DNA of 64,000 bases from NCBI RefSeq assembly GCF_006345805.1, contig NC_043020.1, positions 16,616,001 through 16,680,000 on the forward strand. The letters are read 5' to 3'. A program made the translations under genes and the position numbers. Below, in pieces: positions 1,852 through 60,140 of the stretch (its first letter is position 1; each line of letters opens with the position of its first letter). This stretch comes from Octopus sinensis (taxonomy: Eukaryota). A model generated the notes under the pieces. The model was given only the letters and a program-made list of their open reading frames with translations. It searched no databases and was not told where the DNA came from.

Positions 1852-4800
1852 CTAGCGTTTCTTAATTCTCCTTTGAACATCCAGGAATCTTTCTACCTCC
1901 CCATTTGACCTCAGGTGGTAGGGTGGAGTGAAAATATGCTTTATCACATGCATTTTACAGTTCTTGAATTCATACCCCAAGAATTGCATTCCATAATCAG
2001 AAACTAACATGTCTGGAACAACGTATTGCACAAACAATTCATATAGGAACTTTATAGTTGTCTTAGTGGTTGGTTTATTGCACCTGCATACCTCTGGCCA
2101 CTTTGTACAGCCATCTACCATGATTAGGTAGTAAGTGCCATTCACCGGTCTGGCATAGTAACCTAGATCATGGGTTCTCAGTCTCCAGCCATGATTCATA
2201 TTTTACCTCTGGGACTTTCATATTTTACCTGTGGGGTTCTCACCAAATTTTCAATATCCCAGTCCATAGTTGGCCAAGAGACATAGCTCCTCATTAGAGC
2301 TTTCATCCTTGACATTTTCAGGTTTTCACTGTGGAATTGCTGCAATACACATTTTTGTAATGTTGTTGGTACTACAACTCTTTGCTCATACATCATAATA
2401 TCTTCACATATTTGTATTTTTATTCTGCTTATTTTTTAAAGCTTCTTTCATTTTTGTAATATACTCATCACCTACAGATTTCATTCTTATATCTTGTGAG
2501 TCGCTGGCAGTTCTTGGATAACATTAGTCATAATACTTTTTATTTCATTTTCTGCCTTCAGTGTGGCTGTCACGATATCTTCTCGTGGTTCCGTATTTGG
2601 GGGAATTAATCTTGATAGACAGTCAGCATGACCAATTTTTTTTGGATGGAATATACCACACTTTGAAATTGTAATTTAGTAATATTATACCCCAATGTTG
2701 TAGTCAGTTCACTGTACTGGTAGGTAACCCTTTCTTTGACCCATAAATTGATAGCAATGGTTTGTGATCCGTTTGTAACAGAAACTTGTGAAATTTTTTC
2801 ACTGCAAAGATAATTGATAGGGCTTCTTTTTCTATCTGACTGTATTTTTTTCTCTACTGCTATCAATGAGCATGAAATATGAATCACTGGTTTCATACTT
2901 CTATCTTTATACTTGTGTAGCAAAACTACTCTTATTCCATACTCTGGAGCATCAGTCACTACAACAATGTCCATTTCAGGATCAAAATTTACTAGAGAAA
3001 AATCTGTGATTAGAATTTTTTTTATTTTTTCAAATACGTTTTGGCATTTAACTGACCAATTCCACTTTACTTCCTTTTTTCAATAAGTCATTCAATAGAG
3101 CTCTTAATCCATGCATGTTAGGAATGTAGTTTTGGTAGTAGTTTGCCTGCCCAAGAATTGCTTGTAATGTTAGTATATTTGTCGAAGCAGGCATATTCTT
3201 TATTGCATCTGTCCTTGATGGGTCAGGCCATCTACAAATTTTATCAATTATTTGCCCTAAGTACCTAATTTTGGGCAAAAAATATTTGCATTTTTCATCA
3301 CTCAAAGTGAACCCATACTCTTCAATTTTCTTGAGTGCAGCTTTTGTATGCTCCACATGCTGTTCACGCTAATTACTCTTCATATATCATCCAAATAAGG
3401 GATTGTAAATTCACAATCAGATAACATAGCATCCAAGATTTGCTGAAATATTGCCAGTACAACCTTTAATTCAAAAGGTAACCAGGTATATCTGCACAAT
3501 CCTCTATGTGTATTTATTGTCAGATACTTTGAGCATTTGTCATTTACTTTAATCTGTAAATAAGTGTCGAACAGATCCAATTTGGAGAAAATTTTTCCAC
3601 CGTTTAATTTTGCGAAAATATCCTCTGGAGCCGGCAGTGAATGATGGCATGTCTTTAAGTAGTCATTCAAATTGGCACACAGCCTGATCTTCTTATTTTT
3701 CTTTTTAATGCACACCCGGGTGCCACCCACTTAGAGTAATCCAACTTTTTAATGATTCCACTTTTTCCCAGTCTGTCATTTATGAATCCAATTGCAGCGA
3801 ACAGTACTTTTCTGTTAGATTTAGATACAGGCACAGCGTTTTCACCTACTTGAAAGCCGGCTTCAGTCTTTTTTAAATCCTCCATTAGCATCTGAGAAAA
3901 TATCTTTTTCAATTTTCTTTTCAATTCCTCTGACTATTTATTTTTAACAGGACATGGCAGAACTGAATAGTATAATTGCATAATGCATTCTTGTTTCCAC
4001 TCATATATTTTATTACGAACACTTGTCAATGAGCAGTTGACAGACCTGCTAGAAATAGCTGCTAAATGTCTCCAAATATCTCTCCATCTTCAAAGACGAT
4101 ACGGATATTTCATGGCTAAAACACTTTTGATTGCGGGCTTTTTTCACTTGGTGAGCTAAACAGTGACATACCTGTAACTAAAGGGGTTAGAATGTAACTG
4201 TTTTCGAATAATTTAATAACAATATCATGAAAAGCATATATACATACATACATACATACATACATACATGTATGGTTTGTGTGTTTCTCCTTGAAATATG
4301 ACATCTGTACACATTTTGCCCATGAAATGTAATTTATCATCTGTCACAGCATGCACAATTTTATGGTTTTATGTAACCTCAGTTTCCCAATTTTTCTCCA
4401 CGTATACACATTTATGATTGAAATCTCACTACTTGTATCCAACTGTAGTTTAATATTTACACCATTTATTTTTAAATGTACAAAATTTTCTTGTTTCTGT
4501 GTCATATTCACTTTTTGCTGAAAACGCCTTAGAACTTTTTGCGTTCGACCCTTGTAGTCTTGTCCTGCTGCGTGAGCTCTTGTGACCAAATTTCTGACAA
4601 CTATAACATTTTTGGTTTTTAAACGGACACTCTCTTCTAAAGTCTAGGCCTCCAGATCCTTAACATGGATTGTGGCCTGGCACTCATTTTTGGTTGTACT
4701 TTCCAGGTTGAGACATCTGAATTTTTGTGGAATCTGTCTGTTAAATTTTTTTCACACCATGCTTCAGGTTTACCATTGTTTCATATTCTTCTGCAATGGT

Positions 4801-5783: not shown

Positions 5784-6151
5784 GGTGTGGCTGTGTGGTA
5801 AGAAGCTTGCTTCCCAGCCACATGATTCTGGGTTCATTCCCATTGCATGGCGCCTTGGGCTGACCAAAGCCTTGTGAGTGGATTTTGGTAGATGGAAACT
5901 GAAAGAAACCTGCCGTGTATGTTAATATATATATATAATATATATGCGGGTGGCACATAAAAAGCACCCACTACACTCACGGAGTAGTTGACATTAGGAA
6001 GGGCATCCAGCTGTAGAAACATTGCCAGATAAGACTGGAGCCTGGTGCAGCCTTCTGGCTTCCCGGATCCCCGGTCGAACCGTCCAACCCATGCTAGCAT
6101 GGTGAACGGACGTTAAACGATGATGATGATGATATATATATATATATGTGT

Positions 6152-6186
<35 letters not shown>

Positions 6187-6410
6187 ATATTTATATGTGT
6201 ATGTCTTTCTGTCTGTTTGTCCCCCGTCACCACTTGAACACTGGTGTTGGTGCGTTTATGTCCCCCGTAACTTAGCGGTTCGGCAAAACAGACCGATAGA
6301 ATAAGTACTGGGCTTACAAAGAATAAGTCCCGGAGTCGATTTGCTCAACTAAAGGCAGTGCTCCAGCATGGCCGCAGTCAAATTACTGAAACAAGTAAAA
6401 GAGTAAAGAG
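5784..6410 (+). mobile_element. F1 SINE with a nested F3 (RTE 3' end) at ~5946-6132
   Basis: The F1 head and tail are separated by an F3 segment ending (GAT)n, inserted in the internal TA microsatellite. Confidence 0.85.
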
Positions 6411-7284: not shown

Positions 7285-7676
7285 CATGGCTGTGTGGTAA
7301 GTAGCTTACTTACCAACCACATGGTCCTGGGTTCAGTCCGACTGCATGGCACCTTGGGCAAGTGTCTTGTACTATAGCCTCAAGCCAACCAAAGCCTTGT
7401 GAGTGGATTTGGTAGACAGAAACTGAAAGAAGCCTGTCGTGTATATATATATGTGTGTGTGTGTGTATGTATATGTGTGTCTATGTTTGTCCCCCCACCC
7501 ACCATCGCTTAACAACCGATGTTGGTGTGTTTACATCCTTGTAACTTAGTGGTTTGGCAAAAGAGACTGTAGGATAAGTACTAGGCTTACAAAGAATAAG
7601 TCCTGAGGTCAATTTGTTTGACTAGGAGTGGTGCTCCAGCATGGCTGCAGTTAAATGATTGAAACAAATAAAAGAA
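7285..7676 (+). mobile_element. F1 SINE
   Basis: Head tggctgtgtggtaagtagc; tail gaaacaaataaaaga. Confidence 0.85.
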
Positions 7677-8250: not shown

Positions 8251-8631
8251 GGGAGTGGCTGTGTGGTAAGAAGCTTGCTTCCCAACCACATGGTTCTGGG
8301 TTCAGTCCTACTGCGTGGCAACTTAGGCTACTGTCTTCTACTATAGCCTTAGGTCAACCAAAGCCTTGTGAGTGGATTTGGTAGACGGAATCTGGAAGAA
8401 GCCCGTTGTATATATATATATGTGTGTGTGTGTTTTTGTGTCTGTTTGTCTCCCACCATCACTTGACAACCAATGTTGATGTGTTTGCATCCCCGAAACT
8501 TTGCAGTTTGGCAAGAGAGACTGATAGAATAAGTACTAGGCCTACAAAGAATAAATCCTGGGGTCGATTTGTTTGACTAAAGGCAATGCCCCAGCATGGC
8601 CACAGTCAAATGACTAATACAAGTAAAAGAA
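8251..8631 (+). mobile_element. F1 SINE
   Basis: Full head-to-tail match to the other copies. Confidence 0.85.
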
Positions 8632-10725: not shown

Positions 10726-11249
10726 GTTCTTGAACATAACGCAATTCCCAGTTTTTTTTAACTAAAAATCCCCTGGAGTACAGCCATAATTATGTATATT
10801 TTTTTAAGAATCCAGTGTAGAATCACTGCCAATTTTAAAAGCACTTAAAACATTAAGCTGGCATAGTTCCTTCTTTTGCTCAGTAACCTTAGTTGCTTAA
10901 AAATAAATTAAATAATATTTTTAAAACAATTGTATGTATAACTTCATACTGACAGCATGCTAACTGAATCAACAATTGCTATTGGGTACATTCGCAATAC
11001 ATACTGTGTTTAAAAGCCACGGGCATTGAAATATATCTTTTAGCAGTTAGATGTCTCAGGGCTACAACCTTTAATATCTTCATTTCTACACATTTGCTGT
11101 TGTATTTAATCTGTTTTTATTTTTACACTCAAATATAATGCTACCCAACTATTTTGATTGATTTTCTTTTTAATATTAAATTTGATGTATTATCTAAGAG
11201 TAATTATTGATAATTGCAATTCCTTTTCTTATTTCTCTGCTTCTTTCAG

Positions 11250-11384
11250 TATTACATATTGCCATTTGCCTTTCCAAAGTAAGTGGTTTTACATCGGAAC
11301 TGAACGTGGGAATGTACACATAGTGAACATAGAAACGTTTTCTCTGTCTGGTTATGTAATTAATTGGAACAAAGCAATTGAATT
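11250..11384 (+). CDS. STXBP5: Tomosyn / syntaxin-binding protein 5 internal coding exon A (WD40 region), 135 nt, phase 2-2
   Basis: Acceptor ttctttcAG ends 11249 and donor GTAAGT starts 11385. Translation ITYCHLPFQSKWFYIGTERGNVHIVNIETFSLSGYVINWNKAIE(L) closely matches my recollection of vertebrate tomosyn FCHLPFQSKWLYVGTERGNIHIVNVESFTLSGYVIMWNKAIEL. Confidence 0.95.
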
Positions 11385-11482
11385 GTAAGTATAAAAAATT
11401 CCTCTGGAATTGCCTTCTTTTCTCCAGTCGTCTGTGTTAATATTTGTTAAAGAAAAACTGAGCATTTTTATAGAGTCTTTAA

Positions 11483-14149: not shown

Positions 14150-14548
14150 TACTCTTTTACTTGTTTCAGTCATTTGACTGCGGCCATGCTGGAGCACCGC
14201 CTTTAGTCGAGCAGATCAACCCCGGGACTTATTCTTTGTAAGCCCAGTACTTATTCTATCGGTCTCTTTTTGCTGAACCGCTAAGTGACGGGGACGTAAA
14301 CACACCAGCATCGGTTGTCAAGCAATGCTAGGGGTACAAACACAGACACACAAACACATATATATATATATATATACATATATACGACAGGCTTCTTTCA
14401 GTTTCCGTCTACCAAATCCACTCACAAGGCATTGGTCGGCCCGGGGCTATAGCAGAAGACACTTGCCCAAGATGCCACTCAGTGGGACAGAACCCGGAAC
14501 CATGTGGTTGGTTAGCAAGCTACTTACCACACAGCCACTCCTGCGCCT
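14150..14548 (-). mobile_element. F1 SINE, near consensus
   Basis: Reverse complement of F1 ending cctgcgcct. Confidence 0.88.
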
Positions 14549-15171: not shown

Positions 15172-15478
15172 AGATATGTTTCTTTATTAGCCACACAGGG
15201 CTGCACAAAGACGGGACAAATTACAAGGTAGAGCTTTTCTTTTGGGGATAATAAAAGGGGGTTTGGTTTTCGATCAAAAGGGATTGTAAAAAGAAAGAGA
15301 AAGGCAAAAAAAAGGAGAGGAATAAAATAAAAGGAAAAAGAAAAGATCGATCAATAGGGATCGTTATCACAGAAATGGCAATATAAAGTGTAAAGGAGAG
15401 GACAGGTGAGGTTTATCCGTGGAAAGAAAAGCCTACGGAAAAGACCACGGTAACCTCGGTCAATGAAGTCACATGTTA
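15172..15478 (-). mobile_element. LINE 3'-end fragment whose tail resembles the F2 long tail
   Basis: On - it ends tttgtcccgtctttgtgcagccctgtgtggctaataaagaaac; inserted in a (GATA)n/(TA)n tract. Confidence 0.55.
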
Positions 15479-16440
15479 GATAGATAGATTGATACATAGA
15501 GAAGGAAAGAGAGAGAGAGATACGGAGAGAAGGAAAGAGAGAGAGAGAGAGATTTTACACTTAGATGGCAGAGATGAGCTTTTTTTTTTCCAAATTTGTA
15601 CATTTGCATAATGTTGGTGCAGTTGTTCCCATAACTGATATTTAATTGATACCATTAGGATTGGAATATTTTTGTCACTCAGATAAACAGTATGAAACAA
15701 ACTGACTTAAGAGCACATTTTTTTGATAAATATTTAAAAGGAAATATTTTTTTAAAAAATGGAACACAAGAACAACCATCAGCCAAAGGTGACGATCTTA
15801 TTAAGAATTTATATTTTCATTATTTTACTTTTGGACTGTTTATGTGACAAGTAATTTTTTCTTCATTGTTTTCATTTGAGGAGAGTAGTTTACTCCTTTT
15901 TTCTCTCTTTTGGAGTAAAAGTAATTATTTATTGTTCAATGTAAAACGCAAGGTTGAAAGTTCAAATCCAGTTAAATTTTAGTATTCTGTATTGTATTAA
16001 TTAATGATTATTTTTTTATACCCTATCATCAATATGGATCTTCAGTGTAGGGCATAGAGTGTAGATTGAAAGCTACTTGAAGTTATACTCTCTATATTGT
16101 CCATTCTGTTTTCCATCATCTGTTGATGCATATTTTTATCACGTTATATCACACTGATATCTCTATATCTCGTTTATATTGATTTCTTAGATATGCATTA
16201 GACATGTGCATTAGATAGATATGTGCATAGCCTTGAATTGAGTTGGCAGAGGGCAATAGTTAATTGCATCATCTGCAGAATCTAACTGGTATTTTATCGA
16301 CCCCAAACAGATAAAAGCCATCCTTTAGAATTTAAACCACCCATATTAGGCCCAAATATTCTACCTGCTTTATGTTTAAAACTGATCAGATCCAACCTTT
16401 CATGTTTACACTACAATTTCATTCTAAGAAATAAAGAATC

Positions 16441-17052
16441 AGGAGTGGCTGTGTGGTAAGTAGCTTCTTTACCAATCACATGGTTCCGGGTTCAGTCCCA
16501 CTGCGTGGCATCTTGGGCAAGTGTCTTCTACTATAGCCTCGGGCCGACCAAAGCCTTGTGAGTGGATTTGGTAGATGGAAACTGAAAGAAGCCCATCATA
16601 TATATGTATGTATATATATATATATATATATATATTTCTTTACTACCCACAAGGGGCTAAACACAGAGGAGACAAACAAGGACAGACAAACGGATTAAGT
16701 TGATTACATCGACCCCAGTGCGTAACTGGTACTTAATTTATCGACCCCGGAAGGATGAAAGGCAAAGTCGACCTCGGCGGAATTTGAACTCGGAACGTAA
16801 CGGCAGACGAAATACGGCAACGCATATATATGTGTGTGTGCATGTATGTATGTGTGTCTGTGTTTGTCCCCCTAGCATTGCTTGACAATCAATGCTGGTG
16901 TGTTTATGTCACCGTCACTTAGCGGTTCGACAAAAGGGACCAATAGAATAAGTACTAGGCTTACAAAAGAATAAGTCCCGGGGTCAAGTTGCTAGATTAA
17001 AGGCGGTGCTCCAGCATGGCCGCAGTCAAATGACTGAAACAAGTAAAAGAGT
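16441..17052 (+). mobile_element. F1 SINE with nested antisense F2-long (16633-16825)
   Basis: The F1 halves flank an F2-long fragment inserted in the internal (TA)n. Confidence 0.88.
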
Positions 17053-17091
17053 AATCATATCAATGAGGTTTTGAAACCAAGAGATAATGCT

Positions 17092-17385
17092 CTTCAGTGG
17101 TTACGGCATTGGGCTCACAATCATGAGGTAGTGAGTTCGATTTCTGGGCTGGGTTGTATGTTGTGTTCTTGAGCAAGACACTTTATTTCATGTTGCTCCA
17201 GTCCACTCATCTGTAGAAATGAGTTGCAACATCACTGGTGCCAAACTGTATCGGCCCCTTTGCCTTTCACTTGGAAAGGGGCATGGAAAGGGGAGACTGG
17301 TATGCATGGGCAACTGCTGGTCTTCCATAAACAATTTTGCCCAGAGTTGTGCCTTGGAGGGTAACTTTCTATGTGCAATCCCATG
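17092..17385 (+). mobile_element. F4 SINE
   Basis: cagtggtta...gagttcgatttc A/B-box-like head plus the tgtgttcttgagcaagacactt core. Confidence 0.7.
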
Positions 17386-17724
17386 AATGCTAAAGAGTTA
17401 AAGTAGGATTTGAACTAAGAGCATAAAAGGCTATCTGAATACAGGGTTTTACAAATATTTTGTTTTGATTTTAGAACCAAAAGACAAACAAGTGTAATGG
17501 TTGTTAGTATATCATAATGGTTAAGATGGCACCCTCAACCATGTAATCAGCTGGAATAAATCCCCAAAGGATGAAAGATAAAGTTGACTTTTTGTATGTT
17601 AGGAGACAACAATATTTCATTGAGGGAATTCATCACAAAACAGTAAATTAAAATACGCCCTTAATTTAAAAGGCCCATGTATTGTTGTTATCATTATTGT
17701 TGTTGTTGTTATTGTTAGGGTGGT

Positions 17725-18180
17725 GAAGGTGGCATATTGACAGAATCATTAGCATACTGGCCAAAATGCTTAGTGTTGTTCCTTCTGGTTTTACATTCTG
17801 AGTTTAAATTCTTATTTCTTTATTGCCCACAAGGGGCTAAACACAGAGGAGACAAACAAGGACAGACAAAGGGATTAAGTCGATTACATCGACCCCAGTG
17901 CGTAACTGGTACTTAATTTATCGACCCCGAAAGGATGAAAGGCAAAGTCGACCTCGGCGGAATTTGAACTCAGAACGCAGTGGCGGACGAAATACCACAA
18001 AGCATTTCACCGGCTTGCTAACGTTTCTGCCAACTTGCCGCCTTGAGTTTAAATTCTGCCAAGGCTAACTTTGCCCTTCATCATTTTAGGGTCAATAAAA
18101 TAAGTACCAGTTGAATACTGAGATCAATGTAATCAAACCCCAAACTTGTTGATCTAGTACCAAAATTTGAAATCATTATT
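17725..18180 (+). mobile_element. F2 SINE hosting an antisense full-length F2-long (17813-18043)
   Basis: 14-bp TSD tgagtttaaattct at 17799-17812 and 18044-18057. Confidence 0.9.
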
Positions 18181-18192
18181 ATTATTATTGTT

Positions 18193-18660
18193 TAGGTGGC
18201 AAGCTGGCAGAATCATTAGCACACTGGGTAAAATGCTTAGCAGCATTTCATCCATCTCTACATTCTGAGTTCAAATTATGCCAAGGTCAACTTGACCTTT
18301 CATCTTTTCAGGGTCAATAGATTAAGTACCAGTAAAACACTGGAATCAATATATATTTCTTTACTACCCACAAGGGGCTAAACACAGAGGGGACAAATGA
18401 GGACAAACAGATTAAGTCGATTACATCGACTCCAGTGCGTAACTGGTACTTAATTTATCGACCCCGAAAAATTAAAGGCAAAGTCGACCACAGCGGAATT
18501 TGAACTCAGAACGTAACGACAGACAAAATACGGCTACGCATTTCACCCGGCGTGTTAACATTTCTGTCCGCTCGCCACCTTGGAACACTGGAATCGATAT
18601 AATCGCCTAGTCCTCTCCCACCAAATTTCAGACCTTGTGCTTTTAGTAGAAAGAATTATT
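18193..18660 (+). mobile_element. F2 SINE hosting an antisense F2-long (~18354-18580)
   Basis: 18-bp TSD aacactggaatc(a/g)atata at 18336-18353 and 18584-18601. Confidence 0.9.
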
Positions 18661-19140
18661 ATTATTTTATTATCATCATTATTATTTTTATTATTATTAT
18701 TATGGTAGTGGTGGTAGTTTTAATCAGGTTATCTTGTTTTCAGGACACTGGATGGCAGTAATAAACAGTAGAGCAGTAGATTAAAATGCCTTGTGGTATT
18801 TAAGCTTTGTCAGTTTTGCTTTTCATCTTGGTTTTGATGAATATTTACAATAAATAATGTAAATATAGATTCTAATGACAAAGTTAATAGTCTGGAAAAA
18901 TTATAGTCTTAACAAACAACTCATCTCAGTCATTTAGACATCTTTTAATGTATTCCAGTATTAAAACACTGGATTCTACATAAATCTCTCTTTCTCTCTC
19001 TCTCTCTCTCACACACGTGTTATATGCATATCTGTCTCTCTATCGATTGATCAATAAAATACATACCAGTTGAGCACTGAGATCAAAGTAATTAACTACC
19101 CACCTCCCCTAGAATTTCAGGCCTTGTGTGTAAAATAGAA

Positions 19141-19171
<31 letters not shown>

Positions 19172-19179
19172 TATTATTA

Positions 19180-19590
19180 GGGCAATGAGCTGGCACAATC
19201 CTTAGCATACCAGGCAAAATGCTTAGCGGCATTTCAGCCATCTTTACATTCAGAGGTCTAATTCCTATTTCTTTATTGCCCACAAGGGGCTAAATATGGA
19301 GGGGACAAATAAGGGCAGACAAAGAGATTAAGTTGATTAGATCGACCCCAGTGTGTAACTGGTACTTAATTTATCGACCCCGAAAGGATGAAAGGCAAAG
19401 TCGACCTCAGCGGAACTTGAACTCAGAACGTAATGGCAGACGAAATACTGCTAAGCATTTCGCCCGGCATGCTAACGTTTCTGCCAGCTTGCCACCTTGG
19501 TCTAATTCCATCATGGTTGAGTACTGGAGTCAGTGTAATCAGCTTGCCCCTTCCCTCAAATTTCAGGCCTTGTGCCTATAGTAGAAATAA
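19180..19590 (+). mobile_element. F2 SINE hosting an antisense F2-long (19266-19497)
   Basis: 11-bp TSD ggtctaattcc at 19255-19265 and 19499-19509. Confidence 0.88.
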
Positions 19591-20314
19591 TTATTATTAT
19601 TATTATTAGTAGTAGTAGTAGTAGTAGTGCATGATGGTGCTGGTGGTTTTAATCAGGTTATCTCGTTTTCAGGCAGTAGATGCTTTTGGAAAAGTAGGGA
19701 AAGGTGACCTTAATGCTAGATGAAAGAGAACAGAATGGGATTCATGTGTGCCTTGGCACCACCTCCTTTCAGCTGACATAAAAAGCTAAAAAGTGTGCAC
19801 ATGATAGACATCAGAGATGAACCATAGATAAGAGATGTGAGATTTCTCAACTTGATATTAATACTGCCTCTGTCACTGATATATTTTTTTTTAACAAGTT
19901 CACTTTCTAATGGCACTGTTAGTCTATATATCACTCGTGGGGAAATGAGTCACTGCTGTTTTTAGCAATCACGTGTCCATCATTGACAAAACCAAGGATC
20001 GTTGAAATCACATGATGTGCTGGTCTCAGTGCTTGAGGTGATGGGGGTTTATTTCCTCACTAGTGGTATAAACGAGTGCATTTTGCACCAAAAAGACAAT
20101 ATGAGAGTTTCTCTCATGCTATCTACCTCAGTATAGTTTGTTCTAACACAACATCCTGGTTTAATTGGGGATAAATAAATATGATGAACATTAGTTCAGT
20201 CCTTGCTGCCCCACTCAGGTGAAGTGTACAGGCTAAGGCTGAAACATTTGTGACCGTGAGATACCTGCTGATGATGCAGAAAGGTTTCCAGCATTGCAAT
20301 GGGTTTAGAAGAGC

Positions 20315-20740
20315 TTGTATCTCTCAACCATTCTCGCATCTCTCGACCATTCTTGTATCTCTCCACCATTCTTATATTTCTCAACCATTCTCATATCTCT
20401 CGACCATTCTCGCATCTCTCCACCATTTTCCTATCTCTCAACTATTCTCATATCTCTCAACCATTCTTATATCTCTTGACCATTCTCGCATCTCTCGACC
20501 ATTCTTGTATCTCTCAACCATTCTCCTATCTCTCGACCATTCTCATATCTCTCAACCATTCTCATATCTCTCGACCATTCTCGCATCTCTCCACAATTCT
20601 TGTATCTCTCAACCATTCTCCTATCTCTCAACCATTCTCCTATCTCTCGACCATTCTCATATCTCTCGACCATTCTCGCATCTCTCGACCATTCTTGTAT
20701 CTCTCCACCATTCTCGTATTTCTCAACCATTCTCATACGT
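20315..20740 (+). repeat. 19-bp minisatellite array 1 (CCATTCTCCTATCTCTCGA-type, ~22 units)
   Basis: Direct reading of tandem units. Confidence 0.92.
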
Positions 20741-20799
20741 CTCAGCTATTCTCTGTTTGTCCAATAACCTCCCTTTTCAATTAAAAGAGATTCTAAAGC

Positions 20800-21176: not shown

Positions 21177-21984
21177 TATTGATTTGAGCTGAGTGAGAGT
21201 GCTAGATTCCCTTGTTCGAAAACATAAGGACACAGATCGTGTCGTATAGCCAGCTGGAGATGACGTCTCCTGAGGCTAAATTAGAGCAACACTAGTCCTA
21301 AACCAGGACTGCCATGTTATGTTGGCAAACAATCTTTACTACACAGCATGAATGGCCGGACATCAAAGCAATCTAACACTTCATCTACGCACTACTCAAG
21401 TGTGGTGTTCACCAAACAGCTTACGCCTGAAAACAAATATATTGATATAAGTCGTTTATCCTAATCATGATCAACACAATACTTACAGAATTCAAACTAG
21501 CAACTACAGAATGTTTTTGTTTTCTTTTCATTTGATGCCAGGGAGTGTGTGGTGGGGGGGGGGAAGGGTTAACAAATATTATTGGCAACAGCATCTGATA
21601 ATATTTGTTCCAAGGGATTCCGTTAACTGCTGATTGGTCCCCGTGGAGGTAGAAACAGTTTTTGTGTTGTTTATTTTATTATTTAAAAAAATTTTTTTTT
21701 TTTTTTTGCTGCCAGAAAATGATACAGGTGTCACATTTTGAGTGAACAATACAAGTTACATTTGATCTAAGGACTAATCTACATCTCTCACTTACCCACA
21801 CCTGCAGCATCAATAAAAGATGTGAAGAACTGTTTGCATTCCTAAATCTCCAACAAAGCCTTATAGATAAATCTATAAATGACAATTATCCTGACTAATA
21901 AAACAGTCACATAACCTCCCCCCCCCCACAGCGTGCAAATTACCCATACTGTTATTGTCCAAGACTCATATTTGTCAACCTTGC

Positions 21985-22250
21985 TCCTATCTCTCGCCCA
22001 TTCTCCTATTTCTCGACCATTCTCCTATCTCTCGCCCATTTTCCTATCTCTCACCCATTCTCCTATCTCTCACCCATTCTCCTATCTCTCACCCATTCTC
22101 CTATCTCTCGCCCATTCTCCTATCTCTCGCCCATTCTCCTATCTCTCGCCCATTCTCCTATCTCTCACCCATTCTCCTATCTCTCGCCCATTCTCCTATC
22201 TCTCAACCATTGTCATATCTCTTGACCATTTTCCTATCACTCAACCTTTC
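21985..22250 (+). repeat. 19-bp minisatellite array 2 (~14 units, more homogeneous)
   Basis: Same unit as array 1 and the same 3' flank. Confidence 0.92.
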
Positions 22251-22544
22251 TCACATGTCTCAGCTATTCTCTTTCTGTCCAAATTACATCAGCTCTTATT
22301 TAAGCTTCAGGCCAAAAGATAGTACCTGCCCATGTGTGGATTTTGCTTTCTTCACCACTCACTTTTCTAACCTAGACAACAGCAACAGTGACTTTCAGTT
22401 ACTCTCTCTCAAAGCCTCTCTTCTCCACTCTTCTCTATGCATATTTATCCACCACCGCTTTCTAAACTCATTCAACTACCACCAACTTTCCAGCCATGTC
22501 TTTTCCTGCACTGAAGACATCCACTTCATTTCACCCCTCTTTAA

Positions 22545-23624: not shown

Positions 23625-23850
23625 GCAAGCTGGCAGAAATGTTAGCAAGTCGGGCGAAATGCTTGGCAGTATTTCATCTGCCATTATGTTTTGAGTTCAA
23701 ATTCTGCCGAGGTTGACTTTGCCTTTCATCCTTTCAGAGTCGATAAATTAAGTACCAGTTACACACTGAGGTCGATGTAATCGACTTGATCCCTTTGTCT
23801 TTGTTTGCCCCTCTATGTTTAGCCCCTTGTGGGCAATAAAGAAATAAGAA
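23625..23850 (+). mobile_element. F2-long SINE, full length
   Basis: 14-bp TSD acagcaa(a/g)gtatgt at 23611-24 and 23851-64; tail aataaagaaataagaa. Confidence 0.9.
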
Positions 23851-24914: not shown

Positions 24915-25306
24915 TCTTACTCTTTTACTTGTTTCAGTCATTTGACTGCGGCCATGCTGGAGCACCGCCTTTAGTCAAACAACTCGACCCCGGGACTTAT
25001 TCTTTTGTAAGCCCAGTACTTATTCTATCGGTCTCTTTTGCCGAACCACTAAGTAACGGGGACACAAACACACCAGCATCGGTTGTCAAGCAATGCTAGG
25101 GGAACAAACACAGACACACAAACACACACACGCATATATATATACAACGGGCTTCTTTCAGTTTCCGTCTACCAAATCCACTCACAAGGCTTTGATCGGC
25201 CCGAGGCTATAGTAGAAGACACTTGCCCAAGGTGCCACGCAGTGGGAATGAACCCGGAACCATGTGGTTGGTAAACAAGCTACTTACCACACAGCCACTC
25301 CTGCGC
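24915..25306 (-). mobile_element. F1 SINE, near consensus
   Basis: Reverse complement of F1. Confidence 0.88.
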
Positions 25307-28016: not shown

Positions 28017-28395
28017 AGGCGCAGGAGTGGCTGTGTGGTTAGTAGCTTGCTTACCAACCACATGGTTCTGGGTTCAGTCCCATTGCATGGCACCTTGGGC
28101 AAGGGTCTTCTACTATAGCTTCAGGCTGACCAAAGCCTTGTGAGTGGATTTGGTTGACGGAAACTGAAAGAAGCCCATCGTATATATGTATATGTTTGTG
28201 TGTCTGTGTTTGTCCCCCCAACATCGCTTGACAACCGATGCCCATGTATTTACATCCCTGTCACTTAGTGGTTCGGCAAGAGAGACCGATAGAATAAGTA
28301 CTAGGCCTACAAAGAATAAGTCCTGGGGTCGATTTGCTCGACTAAAGGCGGTGCTCCAGCAAGGCCGCAGTCAAATGACTGAAACAAATAAAAAA
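28017..28395 (+). mobile_element. F1 SINE
   Basis: Starts aggcgcaggagtggctgtgtgg. Confidence 0.88.
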
Positions 28396-31835: not shown

Positions 31836-32545
31836 AGCAGCGAGCTGGCAGAATCATTAGTGCACTGGACAAAATGCTTAGAAGTATTTCGCCTGTCACT
31901 ACATTCTGAGTTCAAATTCCGCCAAGGCCGACTTTGCCTTTCATCCTTTCAGAGTCAATAAATTAAGTACTAGTGAAATACTGGAGTCAATGTATTCAAC
32001 TAGTCTCCTTTCCCCAAATTTTAGGCCTTGTGCCTTTAGTAGAAAAGGTTATTATTACCGTCATTATTAAGGTGGCTAGCTAGCAGAATTGTTATTGTGT
32101 CAGGTGATACGCTTAGTAGCATTTTTGTCCATCTTTTTATTTTCTGCGTTCAAACTCTGCTGAGGTCAACTTTACCTTTCATCCTATCATGGTTGATGAA
32201 ATAAGTACCAGTTATGCACTGAGGTTGTTATAATTGACTAGGCCCCTCCCCACCCAAAATGTGCATATAATAGAAAGGATTATTATTATTATTATTGTTA
32301 TTATTATTATTATTATTGTTATATATATTAGAGTGGCGAGCTAGCAGAATTATTAGCACACCAGGCTTAGTGGCATTTCATTTTTCTTTATGTTCTGAGT
32401 TCAAACTCTGCCAAGGTCACTTTTCCCTTTCATCCTTTCAGGGTCGATAAAATAAGTACCAGTTGAGCACTGGGGGTTGATGTACCTGACTATCCACCCC
32501 ACACCAAAATTTCAGGCCTTGTGCCTACGGCAGAAAGGATTATTA
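31836..32545 (+). mobile_element. Three head-to-tail F2 SINEs joined by (TTA)n
   Basis: Copies at ~31836-32050, 32068-32280 and 32330-32545. Confidence 0.82.
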
Positions 32546-32817
32546 CTAGTTATGATATACAAAACAAACATAGGAGAAATTTCTGTAAACACAAGTTTAT
32601 ATCATTTGTTCCTATACACGTTTCACCATTGTGGTTCTCTGTAACATAATGCAATAAAATATTCCCCTGGTTAAACAACCAATTTCACTTGGGACATTCA
32701 ATGCAGTTTTCTAAACAACCACAACGGTGATGTGTATTTACAAACATGATGTAACTTATATTTATTGTAATTTCTTGTCTACACACACACACGCGCGTAT
32801 ATATATATATATATATA

Positions 32818-49888: not shown

Positions 49889-50954
49889 TTTGTTATATTT
49901 AAAGTAATTGAAAGAAACACAGAGCATCTCAAAATAAATACAGTAACAATAGGGTTAACAACCCCTCGGCCAATTAGCGACATTGTTGCTTTTGGTTATT
50001 GGTCTGTGCGTACACTATCAAAGGGTGTACTTCCTGATGATTGAAGCTGGTCCCACTAGTTTTCTGTGAAAATGAGTCAAAGAAATTTGTCTATGAGTGA
50101 TGTCTTGAACCAAGTGTTGTCATCTGATGAAGAGGCTATTGACAATTATGATCATGGCAATGATGCTAATTTTGAGAGTGAATCTGACAATGATTTAGAC
50201 CCAGAAAGTGAAAGTGATGAGCTTGATGATTCTGTTGCTGTACAAAATGTACAGCCACTGGCAAATGTGCATGGTGCGGTGCCAGTTGGTCAACAAAAAA
50301 GGGAGCATGTTTGTAGCAGGAACGGCAGGCACACTTTACATGGTGGCTGGTGAGGTGGTAGACCCAATGTTCCACTCAGAGTAAGACCCAATACTCCTCC
50401 AGGATGGCAGAGAGACACTGTAGACTTTGCAGAGCACCAATTTATGCCAAATAGTTCTCCAGGGCCCAGGAACATGCCTGATACTATAAATATAGACAGC
50501 ACTCTAAATGATTATTTTAGTTTATTCTGGAATGACGACTTATGGGATATTTTACTCAAGGAAACTAAGAATCAAGCTGAAAGTGTGTCTCGGGCAAAGC
50601 CAAATAATTTCTCGGCAAAAATTTTGCATGAGAAAAAACTTACATTGGAAGAACTGAAAGATTTTTTGGCCTTTGAGTGACCATAGAAATGCTGGTGCAC
50701 AAGGCTCACTATGAACAGTACTGGCAGTCAAAGGATGCCTTACTAACACTGACCTCAGGGATTAATTATAGGACAAGTCTTGTACAGTTTATCGTTCCTA
50801 TCAATGTTCTGATTGCCCTCGTTTGCACAGTGCAATAAAGACCAAATAGCATGAATTCTGTTGCAACTCATGACCTCTGGAAAACCTGATATTTCTCAAT
50901 TTCTTTATATTTTCAATTCCTTTGGTATCCATTCTGTTAGCATATATTATTATT

Positions 50955-51239
50955 ATTAAGACAGCAAGCTGGTAGAATCATTAGCATGCCAGGTGAAATG
51001 CTTAGCGGGATTTTGCCCATAGCTATGTTCTGAGTTCAAATTCCACTGAGGTCAACTTTGCCTTTCATCTTTTCGGGGGTCAATGAATTAAGTACCATTT
51101 ATGCACTGGAGTCGATGTAATCGATTGATCCCCTCCCACCAAATTTCAGGCCTTGTGCCTTTAGTAGAAAGGATGATTGTTGTTGTTGTTGTCGTTGTCG
51201 CTGTCGTCATCACTGCCGTCATTGTTGTTGTTGTTGTTG

Positions 51240-51270
<31 letters not shown>

Positions 51271-51500
51271 TGCAGCAGCAGCAGCAGCAGCAAGGCTGGC
51301 AGAATCTTTAGCAAACCGGACAAAACACTTAGCAGTATTTCATCTGTCTTTAAGTTCTGAATTCAAATTCCACAAGGTTGACTTTACTTTTCATCCTTTT
51401 GGGGTCAATGAAATAAGTACCAGTTTCACAGTGGGGTCGATGTAATCGACTAGCCCACTTCATCACAATTTCAGGCCTTGTACCTATAGTAGAAAGGTTT
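50955..51500 (+). mobile_element. Two head-to-tail F2 SINEs separated by a (GTT)n(GCT)n(GCA)n tract
   Basis: Copies at ~50955-51175 and ~51290-51500. Confidence 0.82.
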
Positions 51501-51677
51501 ATTATCATTATTATTATTATTATTATTATGCAATGATGTCTTGTTATTCATTCGGTTTCATTGTGAACATTTTCTATGCTCTCAGTTCTTCTCTATTTTT
51601 TTCATTGTAATGCGATTATTTTCTTCCAGAATACTTTGTCAACTGACTGAGCAGGAAACCTTGACACTTCTCTCTCA

Positions 51678-53616: not shown

Positions 53617-53774
53617 AGGCGCAGGAGTGGCTGTGGGGTAAGTAGCTTGCTTACCAACCACATGGTTCCAGGTTCATTCCCACTGTGTGGCACCTTGGGC
53701 AAGTGTCTTCTACTGTAGCCTCAGGCCGACCAAAGTCTTGTGAGTGAATTTGGTAGATGGAAACTGAAAGAAGC

Positions 53775-53816
<42 letters not shown>

Positions 53817-54035
53817 TGTGTGTATATGTTTGTGTGTCTGTGTTTGTCCCCCCAACATCGCTTGACAACCGATGCTGGTGTGTTTACGTCTCCGTAACTT
53901 AGCGGTTCAGCAAAAGAGACCGATAGAATAAGTACTAGGCTTACAAAGAATAAGTCCTGGGGTTGATTTGTTCGACTAAAGGCGGTGCTCCAGCATGGCC
54001 GCAGTCACATGACTGAAACAAGTAAAAGAGTAAAG
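53617..54035 (+). mobile_element. F1 SINE, near consensus
   Basis: Head-to-tail match; flanked by ~116-nt direct repeats. Confidence 0.9.
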
Positions 54036-56119: not shown

Positions 56120-57059
56120 GAATATAATATGAACATCAACAACACCATAGAATACAGCTGTCTATCAGAAATATCTCTCTCTTTCTCTCTCCTTCAGTGA
56201 AGTGATTCGTATAAGAAGCAGTGTATGATGTATGAGTCATTTCTATTGCATTATTTCAACAAAATGGTTGGTATAAGGGATGACATAAGATATAAGTTAC
56301 TCAGGAGAAATATGTTGACTGATACAAGGAAAGGTTTCTAATTTTCATTTGTGATTGTGTTGTGAATTTTTTTGTTTTGTTTGACAATTTACTTTACATA
56401 TGTCTAGAAAAAATAAATATCCTTGCGGCTATTTACCAGAGTATTTTGGAAGTAGGTTTATTGAATCTGTTGTTTAGAAGAAACATCCAAATTTTCTTTA
56501 TGCCACGAGGCATTTTCTAACAAAACAATGAAACCAAGCCGGCGACGAGAACATCTTGTTACACTCAACATTCGAAAGATAATGATAAACTTATTGAACA
56601 TTTTCAAGAACCATATAAGAGATTTAAAAACCATTCTAAAAAAAAAAAACTGCATCATTTAAGGCAAATCACGAAGATAGATAAACTGTAGCTTATCATA
56701 TATCACAATTAATTGCAGAGAGCAGTAACAGCCATAATGTAGGTGGAACTTTGATAACACTTTCTATCAAAGTGTTTTCTCAACAGCTGTGCATTAAGTT
56801 CCAACTTCAGTTATAAAAACTCTAAGACTACACTTTGATGAAATGGGTTAATGTTGAAAATAAATTTATTAATGGTCTTCAAAACTCACCATTTTCTATG
56901 CTGTTGGACATTAATGCTTTATTGGTGAAAAATGCAGTGTTTTGATAAAAAAAATAGTGCACCGCACAAAGATGTGATATTTACTGTAAATTTTGTTACA
57001 GATACAGGGATATCTCCTGCTATGAAATCATATATAGCAATAATAATAATGATAATAAT

Positions 57060-57790
57060 AATAATAATTTCAAACTATGATACAGGGCCAGCAATTTTGG
57101 GGTAGGGGTATGTCAATTACATCAATCCCAGTATTCAACTGGTACTTATTTTATCGATCCTGAAAGGGTGAAAGGCAAAGTTCACCTCGGTGGAATTTGA
57201 ACTCAGAACACAAAGCCCGAAGAAATACAGCTAAGCATTTTGCTTGATGTGCTAATAATTCTACCAGCTCACTACCTTTGCAATAATAATAATAATAATA
57301 ATATAATAATAATAATAATAGTAGTAGTAGTAGTAGTAGTAGTAATGGTTTCAAATTTTGCCATAAGAGCAGCCATTTTGGGGGAGGAGATGAATCGATT
57401 ACATTGACCCCAATATCCAACTGATACTTATCTTATTGAGCCCAAAAGAATGAAAGGTAAAGTCAACTTTGGCAGAATTTGAACTCAGATTGGAGTGATG
57501 GGCAAAATACTGTTAAGCATTTCATCCAGCAAGCTAACAATTCTGCCAGCTCACTGCCTTAATAATAATAATAATAATCATTTCTACTATAGGCACAAGG
57601 CCTGAAATTTTAGGAGAAGATGCCAGTCAATTAGATCGACTCCAGTATGCAACTGGTACTTAATTTATCAAACCCAAAAGGATGAAAGGCAAAATTGACT
57701 TCAGCAGAATTTGAACTCAGAATGCAACGATGGGCAAAATATCGCTTAGCATTTCATCCATCATGCTAACAATTCTGCCAGCTTGCCAGC
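57060..57790 (-). mobile_element. Three tandem F2 SINEs joined by (TAA)n/(TAG)n
   Basis: Copies at ~57060-57280, 57345-57560 and 57580-57790. Confidence 0.82.
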
Positions 57791-57975
57791 TTAATAATAA
57801 TGAACCTTGAACAGTACTGTTGCATGAGTTAATGACAGCATTACCAGTAATGAGTCTTTGTTGCAGTTTTGTTTCTTATTTGAAGAAGGACATGTCATAC
57901 ATTTTTTGTATGGATTATATGGTCTGTAGGTAATACCTTGTCAGAAAACATTTGAGCACAAGTCTTCATAATTAA

Positions 57976-59742: not shown

Positions 59743-60140
59743 TAGGAGTGGCTGTGTGGTAAGTAGCTTGCTTACCAACCACATGGTTCCGGGTTCAGTC
59801 CCACTGCATGGCACCTTGGGCAAGTGTCTTCTACTATAGCCTCGGGCCGACCAAAGCCTTGTGAGTGGATTTGGTAGACGGAAACTGAAAGAAGCCCGTC
59901 GTATATATGTATATATATATATACATGTGTGGGTTTGTGTGTCTGTGTTTGTCCCCCTAGCATTGCTTGACAACCGATGCTGGTATGTTTATGCCCCCAT
60001 TACTTAGTGGTTCGGCAAAAGAGACCGATAGAATAAGTACTGGGCTTACAAAAAGAATAAGTCCCGGGGTCGAGTTGCTTGATTAAAGGCGGTGCTCCAG
60101 CATGGCCGAAGTCAAATGACTGAAACAAGTAAAAGAGTAA
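59743..60140 (+). mobile_element. F1 SINE, near consensus
   Basis: Head-to-tail match. Confidence 0.88.

What the first reader, a model, noticed from the sequence alone, without database searches (positions are those of the whole stretch)
17725..19590. A SINE that repeatedly inserts antisense into its own family, twice at the B-box
Seen: three consecutive older F2 copies within 1.9 kb each contain a full-length F2-long in the opposite orientation with clean TSDs (14, 18 and 11 bp). Two land at the equivalent position at the end of the host B-box region (...aaattct| and ...taattcc|). The clean copy at 23625-23850 shows the tail ends AAGAAATAAGAA, complementary to the TTCT/TTCC at those sites. 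Inference: tail-to-target microhomology priming makes the family target its own Pol III promoter, which would inactivate older copies and create short intramolecular dsRNA. I know of no description of this in cephalopods.
Basis: partly seen in the sequence, partly recalled or inferred. Interest (0 to 1): 0.7.

Follow-up and report, generated by a model that had tools for sequence, protein, structure and literature searches.

The report
Younger octopus SINE nested inside older SINEs
Four copies of a younger octopus SINE sit backwards inside older SINE copies within 3 kb, which is real but looks like ordinary nested retrotransposition steered by the element's preference for TA-rich and RGAA sites, not a proven self-targeting system.

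Summary
Three full-length "F2-long" SINE copies (17813-18044, 18354-18583, 19266-19498, all minus strand) lie inside three older plus-strand short-family copies. Their target-site duplications are 13-14, 18 and 11 bp. Two were primed at the same bond, just after the B-box-like motif. The insertions are independent: the hosts belong to different subfamilies, the TSDs are host-specific, and the inserts are only 87-90% identical to each other.

- The family tail ends in AAAGAAATA in 10 of 11 copies. The extra AGAA may be target-derived.
- The dominant target is (TA)n, in 5 of 10 copies. RGAA accounts for 3 of 10.
- The fourth clustered copy (16633-16826) is nested antisense in a different SINE family, at its internal (TA)n. 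So nesting follows the motif, not family identity.
- The B-box is duplicated in the TSD, not destroyed. The hosts were already old and damaged.
- Nesting enrichment is nominal (P about 0.02-0.05, post hoc). The B-box "hotspot" rests on two events.
- The dsRNA potential is real (fold z -3.7 and -7.4).

Position- and orientation-specific SINE-in-SINE hotspots are well documented for human Alu. This is a new example of a known kind. A genome-wide tabulation could not be done with the sequence reachable here.

The parts
16440..16985 (+). F1-family SINE (different family, about 313 bp) acting as host. It is split at its internal (TA)n/(TG)n microsatellite.
   Evidence: BLAST of an F1 copy matches 16440-16609 (query 5-174) and 16845-16985 (query 174-313). 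Sequence read.
16633..16826 (-). F2-long copy, 5'-truncated (model positions 40-233), nested antisense in the F1 host inside (TA)n.
   Evidence: nhmmer score 228.6 bits. Flanks are TA repeats.
17727..17812 (+). Host A (short family), left part, ending at model position 86. The last 13 bases (17800-17812) are the left TSD and the B-box-like motif.
17813..18044 (-). Insert A: full-length F2-long (model positions 2-233).
   Evidence: nhmmer score 268 bits. Alignment.
18045..18188 (+). Right TSD of A (18045-18057, gagtttaaattct) followed by the rest of host A. Its tail subfamily is ccaaaatttgaaatcatt plus (ATT)n.
18195..18353 (+). Host B, left part. It starts directly in host A's (ATT)n tail. The left TSD is 18336-18353.
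18354..18583 (-). Insert B: full-length F2-long, inserted at a host-private TATAT site (TSD TATATYGATTCCAGTGTT in sense orientation).
   Evidence: nhmmer score 248 bits..
18584..18701 (+). Right TSD of B (18584-18601), the rest of host B, and its (ATT)n tail.
18702..18744 (+). 43-nt 3' flank of host B. It is shared at 88% identity with the flank of host C (19631-19673).
   Evidence: These are the only two copies in the window.
19048..19180 (+). 5'-truncated short-family copy plus its (ATT)n tail. Host C starts in that tail.
19181..19265 (+). Host C, left part, ending at model position 86. The left TSD is 19255-19265 (ggtctaattcc).
19266..19498 (-). Insert C: full-length F2-long.
   Evidence: nhmmer score 269 bits.
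19499..19625 (+). Right TSD of C (19499-19509) and the rest of host C (model positions 139-227). About 52 bp of host (model positions 87-138) are missing just beyond the TSD. The (ATT)n(AGT)n tail follows.
23625..23846 (+). It belongs to the same GCAAGC/GGGCAAT sub-lineage as inserts A and C.

Best explanation
These are ordinary, independent target-primed reverse-transcription insertions of a younger SINE into older SINEs, in a SINE-dense stretch of an Octopus genome.

Shown:
- F2-long shares its tRNA-like head and core with the short family but has a different, about 65-nt 3' module ending in AAAGAAATA.
- Each insert has its own TSD.
- The hosts are older than the inserts.
- The hosts themselves were laid head-to-tail by insertion into each other's (ATT)n tails.

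Inferred:
- Where F2-long lands is set by the nick and priming preference of its unidentified partner LINE. That preference is for DNA whose nicked 3' end resembles the RNA tail, mostly (TA)n, and for one sub-lineage RGAA(TT).
- The short-family body offers very few such sites. The best one is AAATTCY at the end of the B-box-like motif, on the strand that forces antisense orientation. So two hits at one bond and the antisense orientation are by-products of the motif.
- The hairpin-forming composites are a side effect. They are possible ADAR substrates if the region is transcribed as part of an intron.
For: Independence of the events:
- Host A has a different tail subfamily from hosts B and C.
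- Left and right TSD copies are identical within each composite but differ between A and C at homologous host positions.
- Inserts are 87-90% identical to each other, in a star-like pattern.

Motif-driven site choice:
- TSD starts are TATAT in 5 of 10 copies (P = 2e-8) and RGAA in 3 of 10 (P = 1.5e-4).
- Insert B uses a host-private TATAT. At that position the short-family copies aligned mostly read caatgtaatc, and host B reads caatataatc.
- The fourth clustered copy is antisense in the (TA)n of an unrelated F1 SINE.
- A different retroposon with the same 3' tail (15180-15480) has the TSD TATCTATCTA.

Motif scarcity in the host:
- By my reading of the short-family alignment, RGAAT occurs about three times in the short-family sequence, twice in antisense.
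- Of 89 RGAATT sites in the window, about 12-15 are SINE B-box ends.

Nesting level:
- 4 of 9 copies lie in the 16.8% of the window that is F1 or F2 SINE: P = 0.049.
- 3 of 9 copies lie in the 7% that is F2-related: P = 0.021.
- This is the same order as the four-fold nesting excess reported for human TEs (PMC2836564).

Tail-matched targeting in the older family: 10 of 15 short copies are preceded by (ATT)n. This fits the published correlation between 3' microsatellite and TSD start (PMC6007223).
Against: - Two of three same-family nestings at exactly the same bond has P = 0.007 under a uniform model. It has P of about 0.001-0.005 if only a 4-5-nt RGAA(T) motif is required. So the explanation needs a longer recognition motif, about 6-7 nt, which the 10-11 available sites cannot establish.
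- 2 of about 15-17 short-family B-box ends in the window are occupied. That rate is high if it is general.
- All four clustered copies are antisense to their hosts.
- The partner LINE was not identified.
- The sample is one 64-kb window that was selected because it looked unusual.
Confidence: 0.6

Rival explanations
1. The F2-long sub-lineage has a tail ending ...AAATAAGAA. This tail pairs with TTCT/TTCC at the end of the B-box of its own relatives and produces a true, family-directed antisense hotspot, one that exceeds motif-matched background.
For: - A and C were primed at the identical bond.
- A, C and the un-nested copy 23625 share GCAAGC and GGGCAAT, and all three have RGAA right after AAATA. 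None of the 6 copies in the TAG/TAA tail lineage with a readable junction does. With the L002 CAAT-type copy counted on the sub-lineage side, that is 3 of 4 against 0 of 6 (Fisher P = 0.03, worked out by hand).
- The double hit is unlikely under 4-5-nt motif models.
- There is an Alu precedent for a single-nucleotide self-insertion hotspot (PMC2836564).
Against: - n = 2, chosen post hoc.
- A CAAT-type copy in O. bimaculoides (L002) has TATTTA, not RGAA, after the tail.
- AGAA is present in both TSD copies, so it belongs to the target.
- The other two clustered nestings are at TA sites, and one of them is in another family.
- No further nested event was found in 207 kb of additional Octopus DNA, though that DNA held only 2 F2-long copies.
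- The B-box is duplicated, not disrupted, so the proposed promoter inactivation does not follow.
Confidence: 0.27
2. Retention bias rather than insertion bias. F2-long inserts fairly broadly at A/T-rich sites, but copies landing in pre-existing SINE junk, and in antisense to the host transcript, are tolerated, while others are purged.
For: - The F2-long tail carries AATAAA in sense orientation.
- 7 of 9 window copies are on the minus strand, while 13 of 17 short copies are on the plus strand.
- SINE density is very uneven: 9 F2-long copies per 64 kb in the window against 2 per 207 kb in LTR-rich loci.
Against: - Gene orientation in the window is not established. The candidate exon at 11158-11388 has no Pfam or PDB support.
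- Retention bias does not explain identical nick positions.
- The strand counts are not significant.
Confidence: 0.08
3. The three composites descend from one composite by local duplication, or are an assembly artefact of a collapsed SINE array.
For: - Hosts B and C share a 43-nt 3' flank at 88% identity.
- Composites A and C align in register over 274 nt at 85% identity.
Against: - Inserts B and C are at different host positions with different TSDs.
- Hosts A and C belong to different tail subfamilies.
- The TSD pairs are identical within a composite but differ between composites.
- The inserts differ by 9.5-13%.
- Homology after hosts B and C stops after 43 nt.
Confidence: 0.03

Closest known systems
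Alu-in-Alu self-insertion hotspot and nested-TE hotspots in human (Levy, Schwartz and Ast 2010, PMC2836564)
   Same: A SINE nests in older members of its own family at a single preferred nucleotide and in a preferred orientation. This is explained by how the nicked target primes reverse transcription. Young TEs nest in old TEs about four-fold more than expected.
   Different: The Alu hotspot is in sense orientation, after the A-rich linker, and uses L1 with poly(A). It is based on 15,759 events. Here the orientation is antisense, the site is the end of the B-box-like motif, the tail is not poly(A), the partner LINE is unknown, and there are two events.
Tail-matched target choice of RTE-related and other 'stringent' LINE/SINE pairs (Nishiyama and Ohshima 2018, PMC6007223)
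   Same: The first bases of the TSD correlate with the microsatellite-like 3' end of the element. Here (ATT)n-tailed copies lie in (ATT)n, and ...AAATA-tailed copies lie in (TA)n.
   Different: The T-stretch-plus-10-nt signature described there was not seen by eye at the A, B and C sites and was not formally scored. The partner LINE clade is not determined here.
CORE-SINEs of octopus (OR1/OR2, Ohshima and Okada 1994; cited in PMC4824008 and PMC4758252)
   Same: A tRNA-like head with a B-box-like GAGTTCAAATTCC, a conserved central domain shared by families with different 3' tails, and an octopus host.
   Different: The OR1/OR2 sequences could not be obtained. The resemblance of the core to the MIR/CORE domain is from memory only.
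Inverted SINE pairs as ADAR substrates (Alu in primates; hyper-editing of repeats in octopus, PMC5625713 and PMC9068888)
   Same: Oppositely oriented related SINEs within a few hundred bases fold into long imperfect dsRNA.
   Different: Here the inverted pair is created by nesting within a single element. No expression or editing data were examined.
Tandem-like and palindromic SINE structures in bivalves (PMC11481361)
   Same: Mollusc tRNA-related SINEs occur in direct arrays and palindromes, often in introns.
   Different: Unequal recombination was proposed there. Here the arrays have (ATT)n junctions and the nested copies have individual TSDs, which point to serial insertion.

Membership tests
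Non-LTR retroposon inserted by target-primed reverse transcription | Each copy is flanked by its own target-site duplication, and the empty site can be reconstructed | tested here: met
   TSDs of 13-14, 18 and 11 bp. The hosts become contiguous HMM hits after excision.
Non-LTR retroposon inserted by target-primed reverse transcription | The 3' tail is shared with a partner LINE | tested here: inconclusive
   The 45-nt tail is shared with another short retroposon at 15180-15480. No LINE ORF with this tail is present in the window.
tRNA-derived SINE (Pol III type 2 promoter) | Head recognisable as a tRNA | tested here: not met
   ARAGORN found no tRNA genes in the window. The Rfam scan of 16500-19700 at E up to 10 gave no tRNA match.
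tRNA-derived SINE (Pol III type 2 promoter) | A and B box motifs at suitable spacing | tested here: inconclusive
   GAGTTCAAATTCC matches the canonical GGTTCGANNCC at 8 of 11 positions by eye (consensus). The A box is weak. No transcription data were examined.
CORE-SINE superfamily | Central domain of about 60 nt homologous to the CORE consensus | not testable with these tools
   No Repbase, Dfam or SINEBase sequences are on hand. PMC15861 is not held. The resemblance is recalled from memory only.
Nested-TE insertion hotspot (sensu Levy et al. 2010) | The distribution of many exact insertions along the host consensus deviates significantly from background, with a dominant position and orientation | tested here: inconclusive
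   Three same-family events, two at the same bond (P = 0.007 under a uniform model, post hoc). No further events were found in 207 kb of extra Octopus DNA.

The most novel reading that the evidence does not exclude
Homing by read-through. Once an F2-long master sits antisense at a B-box end, its Pol III transcripts run past the tail into antisense host-SINE sequence (AGAAUUUAAACUC...). That 3' extension can pair over many bases with the same region of any other short-family copy. Daughters would then be primed at the identical bond and orientation. This would be a self-reinforcing, homology-guided SINE-into-SINE targeting that also seeds intronic dsRNA across the genome.
Probability: 0.06. Interest if true: 0.75.

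Novelty: new member of a known kind. Interest (0 to 1): 0.3.

Why it matters
If a genome-wide B-box-end peak exists, it would give a non-mammalian, non-L1 example of a single-nucleotide SINE self-insertion hotspot. It would also give a handle on how the unknown partner LINE picks and primes its targets. And it could partly explain why octopus genomes are unusually rich in loci able to form long dsRNA, the substrate of their heavy repeat-directed A-to-I editing (PMC5625713, PMC9068888). As it stands, the locus mainly illustrates how tail-matched insertion builds SINE arrays and nests in a SINE-dominated genome.

Tried and rejected
Searches for more copies:
- A protein search with an ORF translated across the SINE found nothing.
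- Exact-pattern scans of viral, metagenome and prokaryote genome collections found nothing.
- A piggyBac-like ORF query found nothing.
- A reverse-transcriptase query did reach Octopus bimaculoides and O. sinensis chromosomes. Ten 20-kb loci were fetched. They are LTR-rich and SINE-poor: 2 F2-long copies in 207 kb, none nested. An ENA locus, L011, has none of these SINEs.

Provenance: the window's own ORF is not on record, so the source assembly was not identified.

tRNA origin of the head: no support from ARAGORN or Rfam. The MIR2619 match at 18002-18236 (31 bits against a gathering score of 113) is just the inverted SINE heads.

Rejected explanations:
- A single duplicated composite.
- Regional clustering as an independent signal. 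3 of 9 copies within 1.7 kb is not significant (P = 0.145).
- Internal priming on the AGAA inside AAAGAAATA. This would delete the terminal ATA, which is retained.

Literature and gene identification:
- The octopus genome paper and the CORE-SINE paper are not held.
- The candidate exon at 11158-11388 could not be identified by PDB or Pfam search.

Full report
**What is there.** The window is AT-rich (36.6% GC) and carries SINE families that also occur in Octopus bimaculoides chromosomes. Two related families share a tRNA-like head and a conserved core of about 170 nt but have different 3' modules.
- The older "short" family ends ...TTTCAGGCCTTGTGCCTATAGTAGAAAGGATT(ATT)n, with a second tail variant ...CCAAAATTTGAAAYCATT. 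Its copies are 13-25% diverged at non-CpG sites.
- The younger "F2-long" family ends ...TTAGCCCCTTGTGGGYARTAAAGAAATA. Its copies are 4-9% diverged.
- The window holds nine F2-long copies and about 26 short-family copies or fragments (7.0% of the pre-insertion sequence).
- A third, unrelated SINE family of about 313 bp, here called F1, covers 9.9% of the window.

**Checking the observation.** The three composites are as described. Exact coordinates are in the parts list.
- Each insert is full length (model positions 2-233) and on the minus strand, inside a plus-strand host.
- The TSDs are 13-14 bp (gagtttaaattct), 18 bp with one mismatch (aacactggaatc[a/g]atata), and 11 bp (ggtctaattcc).
- Removing each insert and one TSD copy turns every host back into one contiguous profile hit.
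- The left parts of hosts A and C both end at model position 86. So the nick that primed reverse transcription, the one next to the element's tail, was at the same phosphodiester bond. That bond is immediately 3' of the B-box-like GAGTTCAAATTCY.

**Independence of the events.**
- Host A has the ...AAAATTTGAAATCATT tail variant. Hosts B and C have ...TATAGTAGAAA.
- Within each composite the two TSD copies are identical. Between A and C they differ at several homologous host positions (gagtttaaattct against ggtctaattcc). That is not expected if one composite had been duplicated.
- The inserts are 87.2-90.5% identical to each other, no closer than to copies elsewhere.
- Hosts B and C do share a 43-nt 3' flank at 88% identity, and homology then stops. 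So those two hosts may be related by a small duplication or by 3' transduction. Their inserts are nevertheless at different positions with different TSDs.

A fourth F2-long copy lies 1 kb upstream (16633-16826, minus strand, 5'-truncated) and is also nested antisense. Its host is an F1 SINE (16440-16985, plus strand), and the insertion is in that element's internal (TA)n/(TG)n tract. So all four F2-long copies in this 3-kb stretch are nested antisense in SINEs, and one host is not a relative.

**Where F2-long inserts.** In the sense orientation of the element, the bases that follow ...AAAGAAATA and begin the TSD are as follows:
- TATAT-type in five of ten copies: 16633, B, 27780, 34379 and L002.
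- RGAA in three: A has AGAATTT, C has GGAATTA, and 23625 has AGAAAC.
- GGTA in one (60719) and ACAC in one (L003).

Against window background frequencies of about 1% each, TATAT (P = 2e-8) and RGAA (P = 1.5e-4) are both enriched. A different short retroposon with the same 45-nt tail (15180-15480) has the TSD TATCTATCTA. Insert B sits at a TATAT that exists only in host B. At that position the short-family copies aligned mostly read caatgtaatc, and host B reads caatataatc.

The older family shows the same principle more strongly. Ten of fifteen full copies are preceded by (ATT)n, which is their own tail repeat. This produces head-to-tail arrays at 17.7-19.6 kb, 31.8-32.6 kb, 51.0-51.5 kb and 57.1-57.8 kb. 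It matches the published correlation between 3' microsatellites and TSD starts (PMC6007223).

**The tail-microhomology claim.**
- The family tail ends in AAAGAAATA in 10 of 11 copies.
- The AGAA/GGAA after it in A and C is present in both TSD copies, so it belongs to the target.
- In the "clean" copy it can be read either as tail or as the first bases of an imperfect 18-bp TSD.
None of the six TAG/TAA-lineage copies with a readable junction has RGAA. With the L002 copy counted on the sub-lineage side, the split is 3 of 4 against 0 of 6 (Fisher P = 0.03, worked out by hand). A sub-lineage whose RNA ends ...AUAAGAA, possibly followed by terminator Us, is therefore plausible.
- The data here cannot decide this.

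**Is the B-box a hotspot?** The figures below are all post hoc, and they come from one window that was picked because it looked odd.
- Under a uniform model, two of three nestings at one bond and orientation has P = 0.007.
- With only a 4-5-nt RGAA(T) requirement, the double hit would still be unlikely, because only about 1-4% of such sites are B-box ends.
- With a 6-mer RGAATT it is unremarkable. The window has 89 such sites, of which about 12-15 are SINE B-box ends.
- By my reading of the short-family alignment, the short-family sequence contains RGAAT about three times, twice in the antisense sense. So antisense orientation is the expected outcome.
- Nesting in F2 relatives: 3 of 9 copies against 7.0% coverage, P = 0.021.
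- Nesting in any SINE: 4 of 9 copies against 16.8% coverage, P = 0.049.
- Clustering of 3 copies within 1.7 kb is not significant: P = 0.145.
- The additional 207 kb of Octopus DNA that could be fetched is SINE-poor. It added two un-nested copies only.

- The insertion does not hit the promoter. The nick is just past the B-box-like motif, and the TSD duplicates that motif. The host's A-box region and B-box-like motif remain upstream of the insert with their spacing unchanged.
- What the insertion does is separate the host head from its own 3' tail.
- The hosts were already decayed. Host A has a T4 run at 17789-17792, and host C lacks model positions 87-138.
- The dsRNA idea holds structurally. 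Composite C folds with the host head paired to the antisense head of the insert (-129 kcal/mol, z = -3.7). Composite A folds with a duplex of about 100 bp between the insert core and the host core (-152.6 kcal/mol, z = -7.4).
- Whether the region is transcribed is unknown.

**Comparison with what is known.**
- Position- and orientation-specific nesting hotspots, including a single-nucleotide Alu-in-Alu hotspot explained by priming, and a four-fold excess of young-in-old nesting, are documented for human (PMC2836564).
- Octopus genomes are SINE-dominated and show heavy repeat-directed A-to-I editing and an unusually high density of potential long dsRNA (PMC9068888; PMC5625713).
- Tandem and palindromic SINE structures are described in bivalves (PMC11481361).
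- I found no paper describing this particular octopus pattern.
- Membership of the families in the CORE-SINE superfamily (octopus OR1/OR2) is a recollection, not a test. The head is not recognised as a tRNA by ARAGORN or Rfam.

**Verdict.** This is a real, neatly preserved set of four independent nested insertions. The best explanation is ordinary TPRT with tail-like target preference in a SINE-dense region (confidence 0.6). A true B-box-end hotspot beyond motif content remains possible (about 0.27) and is cheaply testable genome-wide. Promoter inactivation is not supported. The case is a new example of a known kind, of modest interest.

Noticed in passing
window 16440-16985, with about 25 further copies (e.g. 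996-1336, 7287-7610, 8252-8565, 14219-14547, 24986-25306, 28018-28330, 53618-53963, 59744-60071): A second, unrelated SINE family ('F1', about 313 bp, starting GGCGCAGGAGTGGCTGTGTGG...) covers 9.9% of the window. It has an internal (TA)n/(TG)n tract. That tract is expanded in some copies (5784-6337) and serves as a target for F2-long.
   Followed up: partly
window 31837-32550, 50959-51510, 57053-57791, 17727-19625: Short-family SINEs form head-to-tail arrays of 2-4 copies joined through (ATT)n. 10 of 15 full copies are preceded by (ATT)n, which indicates serial insertion into the tail repeat.
   Followed up: partly
window 15180-15480 (-): A different short retroposon without the F2 head shares the last 45 nt or so of the F2-long tail (...CCCTGTGTGGCTAATAAAGAAACA). 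It has the TSD TATCTATCTA, so it probably uses the same partner LINE.
   Followed up: partly
window 18702-18744 and 19631-19673: Hosts B and C are followed, after their ATT tails, by the same 43 nt (88% identity) ending in ...GTTTTCAGG. Homology then stops. This could be 3' transduction up to a T-run, or a small duplication that predates both inserts.
   Followed up: partly
window 19510-19513: Host C lacks about 52 bp (model positions 87-138) immediately beyond the TSD on the head side of insert C, with 'atca' left in between. Whether the deletion predates the insertion or accompanied it is unresolved.
   Followed up: no
window 20314-20753 and 21984-22271: Two arrays of a 19-bp minisatellite (GTATCTCTCAACCATTCTC and CTCCTATCTCTCGCCCATT, 23 and 14 copies). 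They create long spurious ORFs.
   Followed up: partly
window 1852-3924 (-): A degraded LTR-retrotransposon pol (RT and integrase fragments with frameshifts). It is 55-72% identical to 'K02A2.6-like' proteins of O. bimaculoides and O. sinensis.
   Followed up: partly
window 50066-50680 (+): ORFs resembling the N-terminal part of a piggyBac-type transposase (from memory), cut off by two short-family SINEs at 50959-51510. No database hit was obtained.
   Followed up: partly
window 11158-11388 (+): An ORF ending ...LPFQSKWFYIGTERGNVHIVNIETFSLSGYVINWNKAIEL looks like a WD40-type exon. Tomosyn or Lgl-like is a recollection only. No Pfam hit and only weak WD-repeat PDB hits were found. If real, the SINE cluster lies in an intron of a plus-strand gene.
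   Followed up: partly
window as a whole against loci L001-L010: F2-long density is 9 per 64 kb in the window but 2 per 207 kb around LTR-retrotransposon genes in O. bimaculoides and O. sinensis. This is strong regional heterogeneity of SINE load.
   Followed up: partly
window 18002-18236 (-): A sub-threshold Rfam match to plant MIR2619 (31 bits against a gathering score of 113). It is produced by the inverted heads of insert A and host B, and it is not a miRNA gene.
   Followed up: yes
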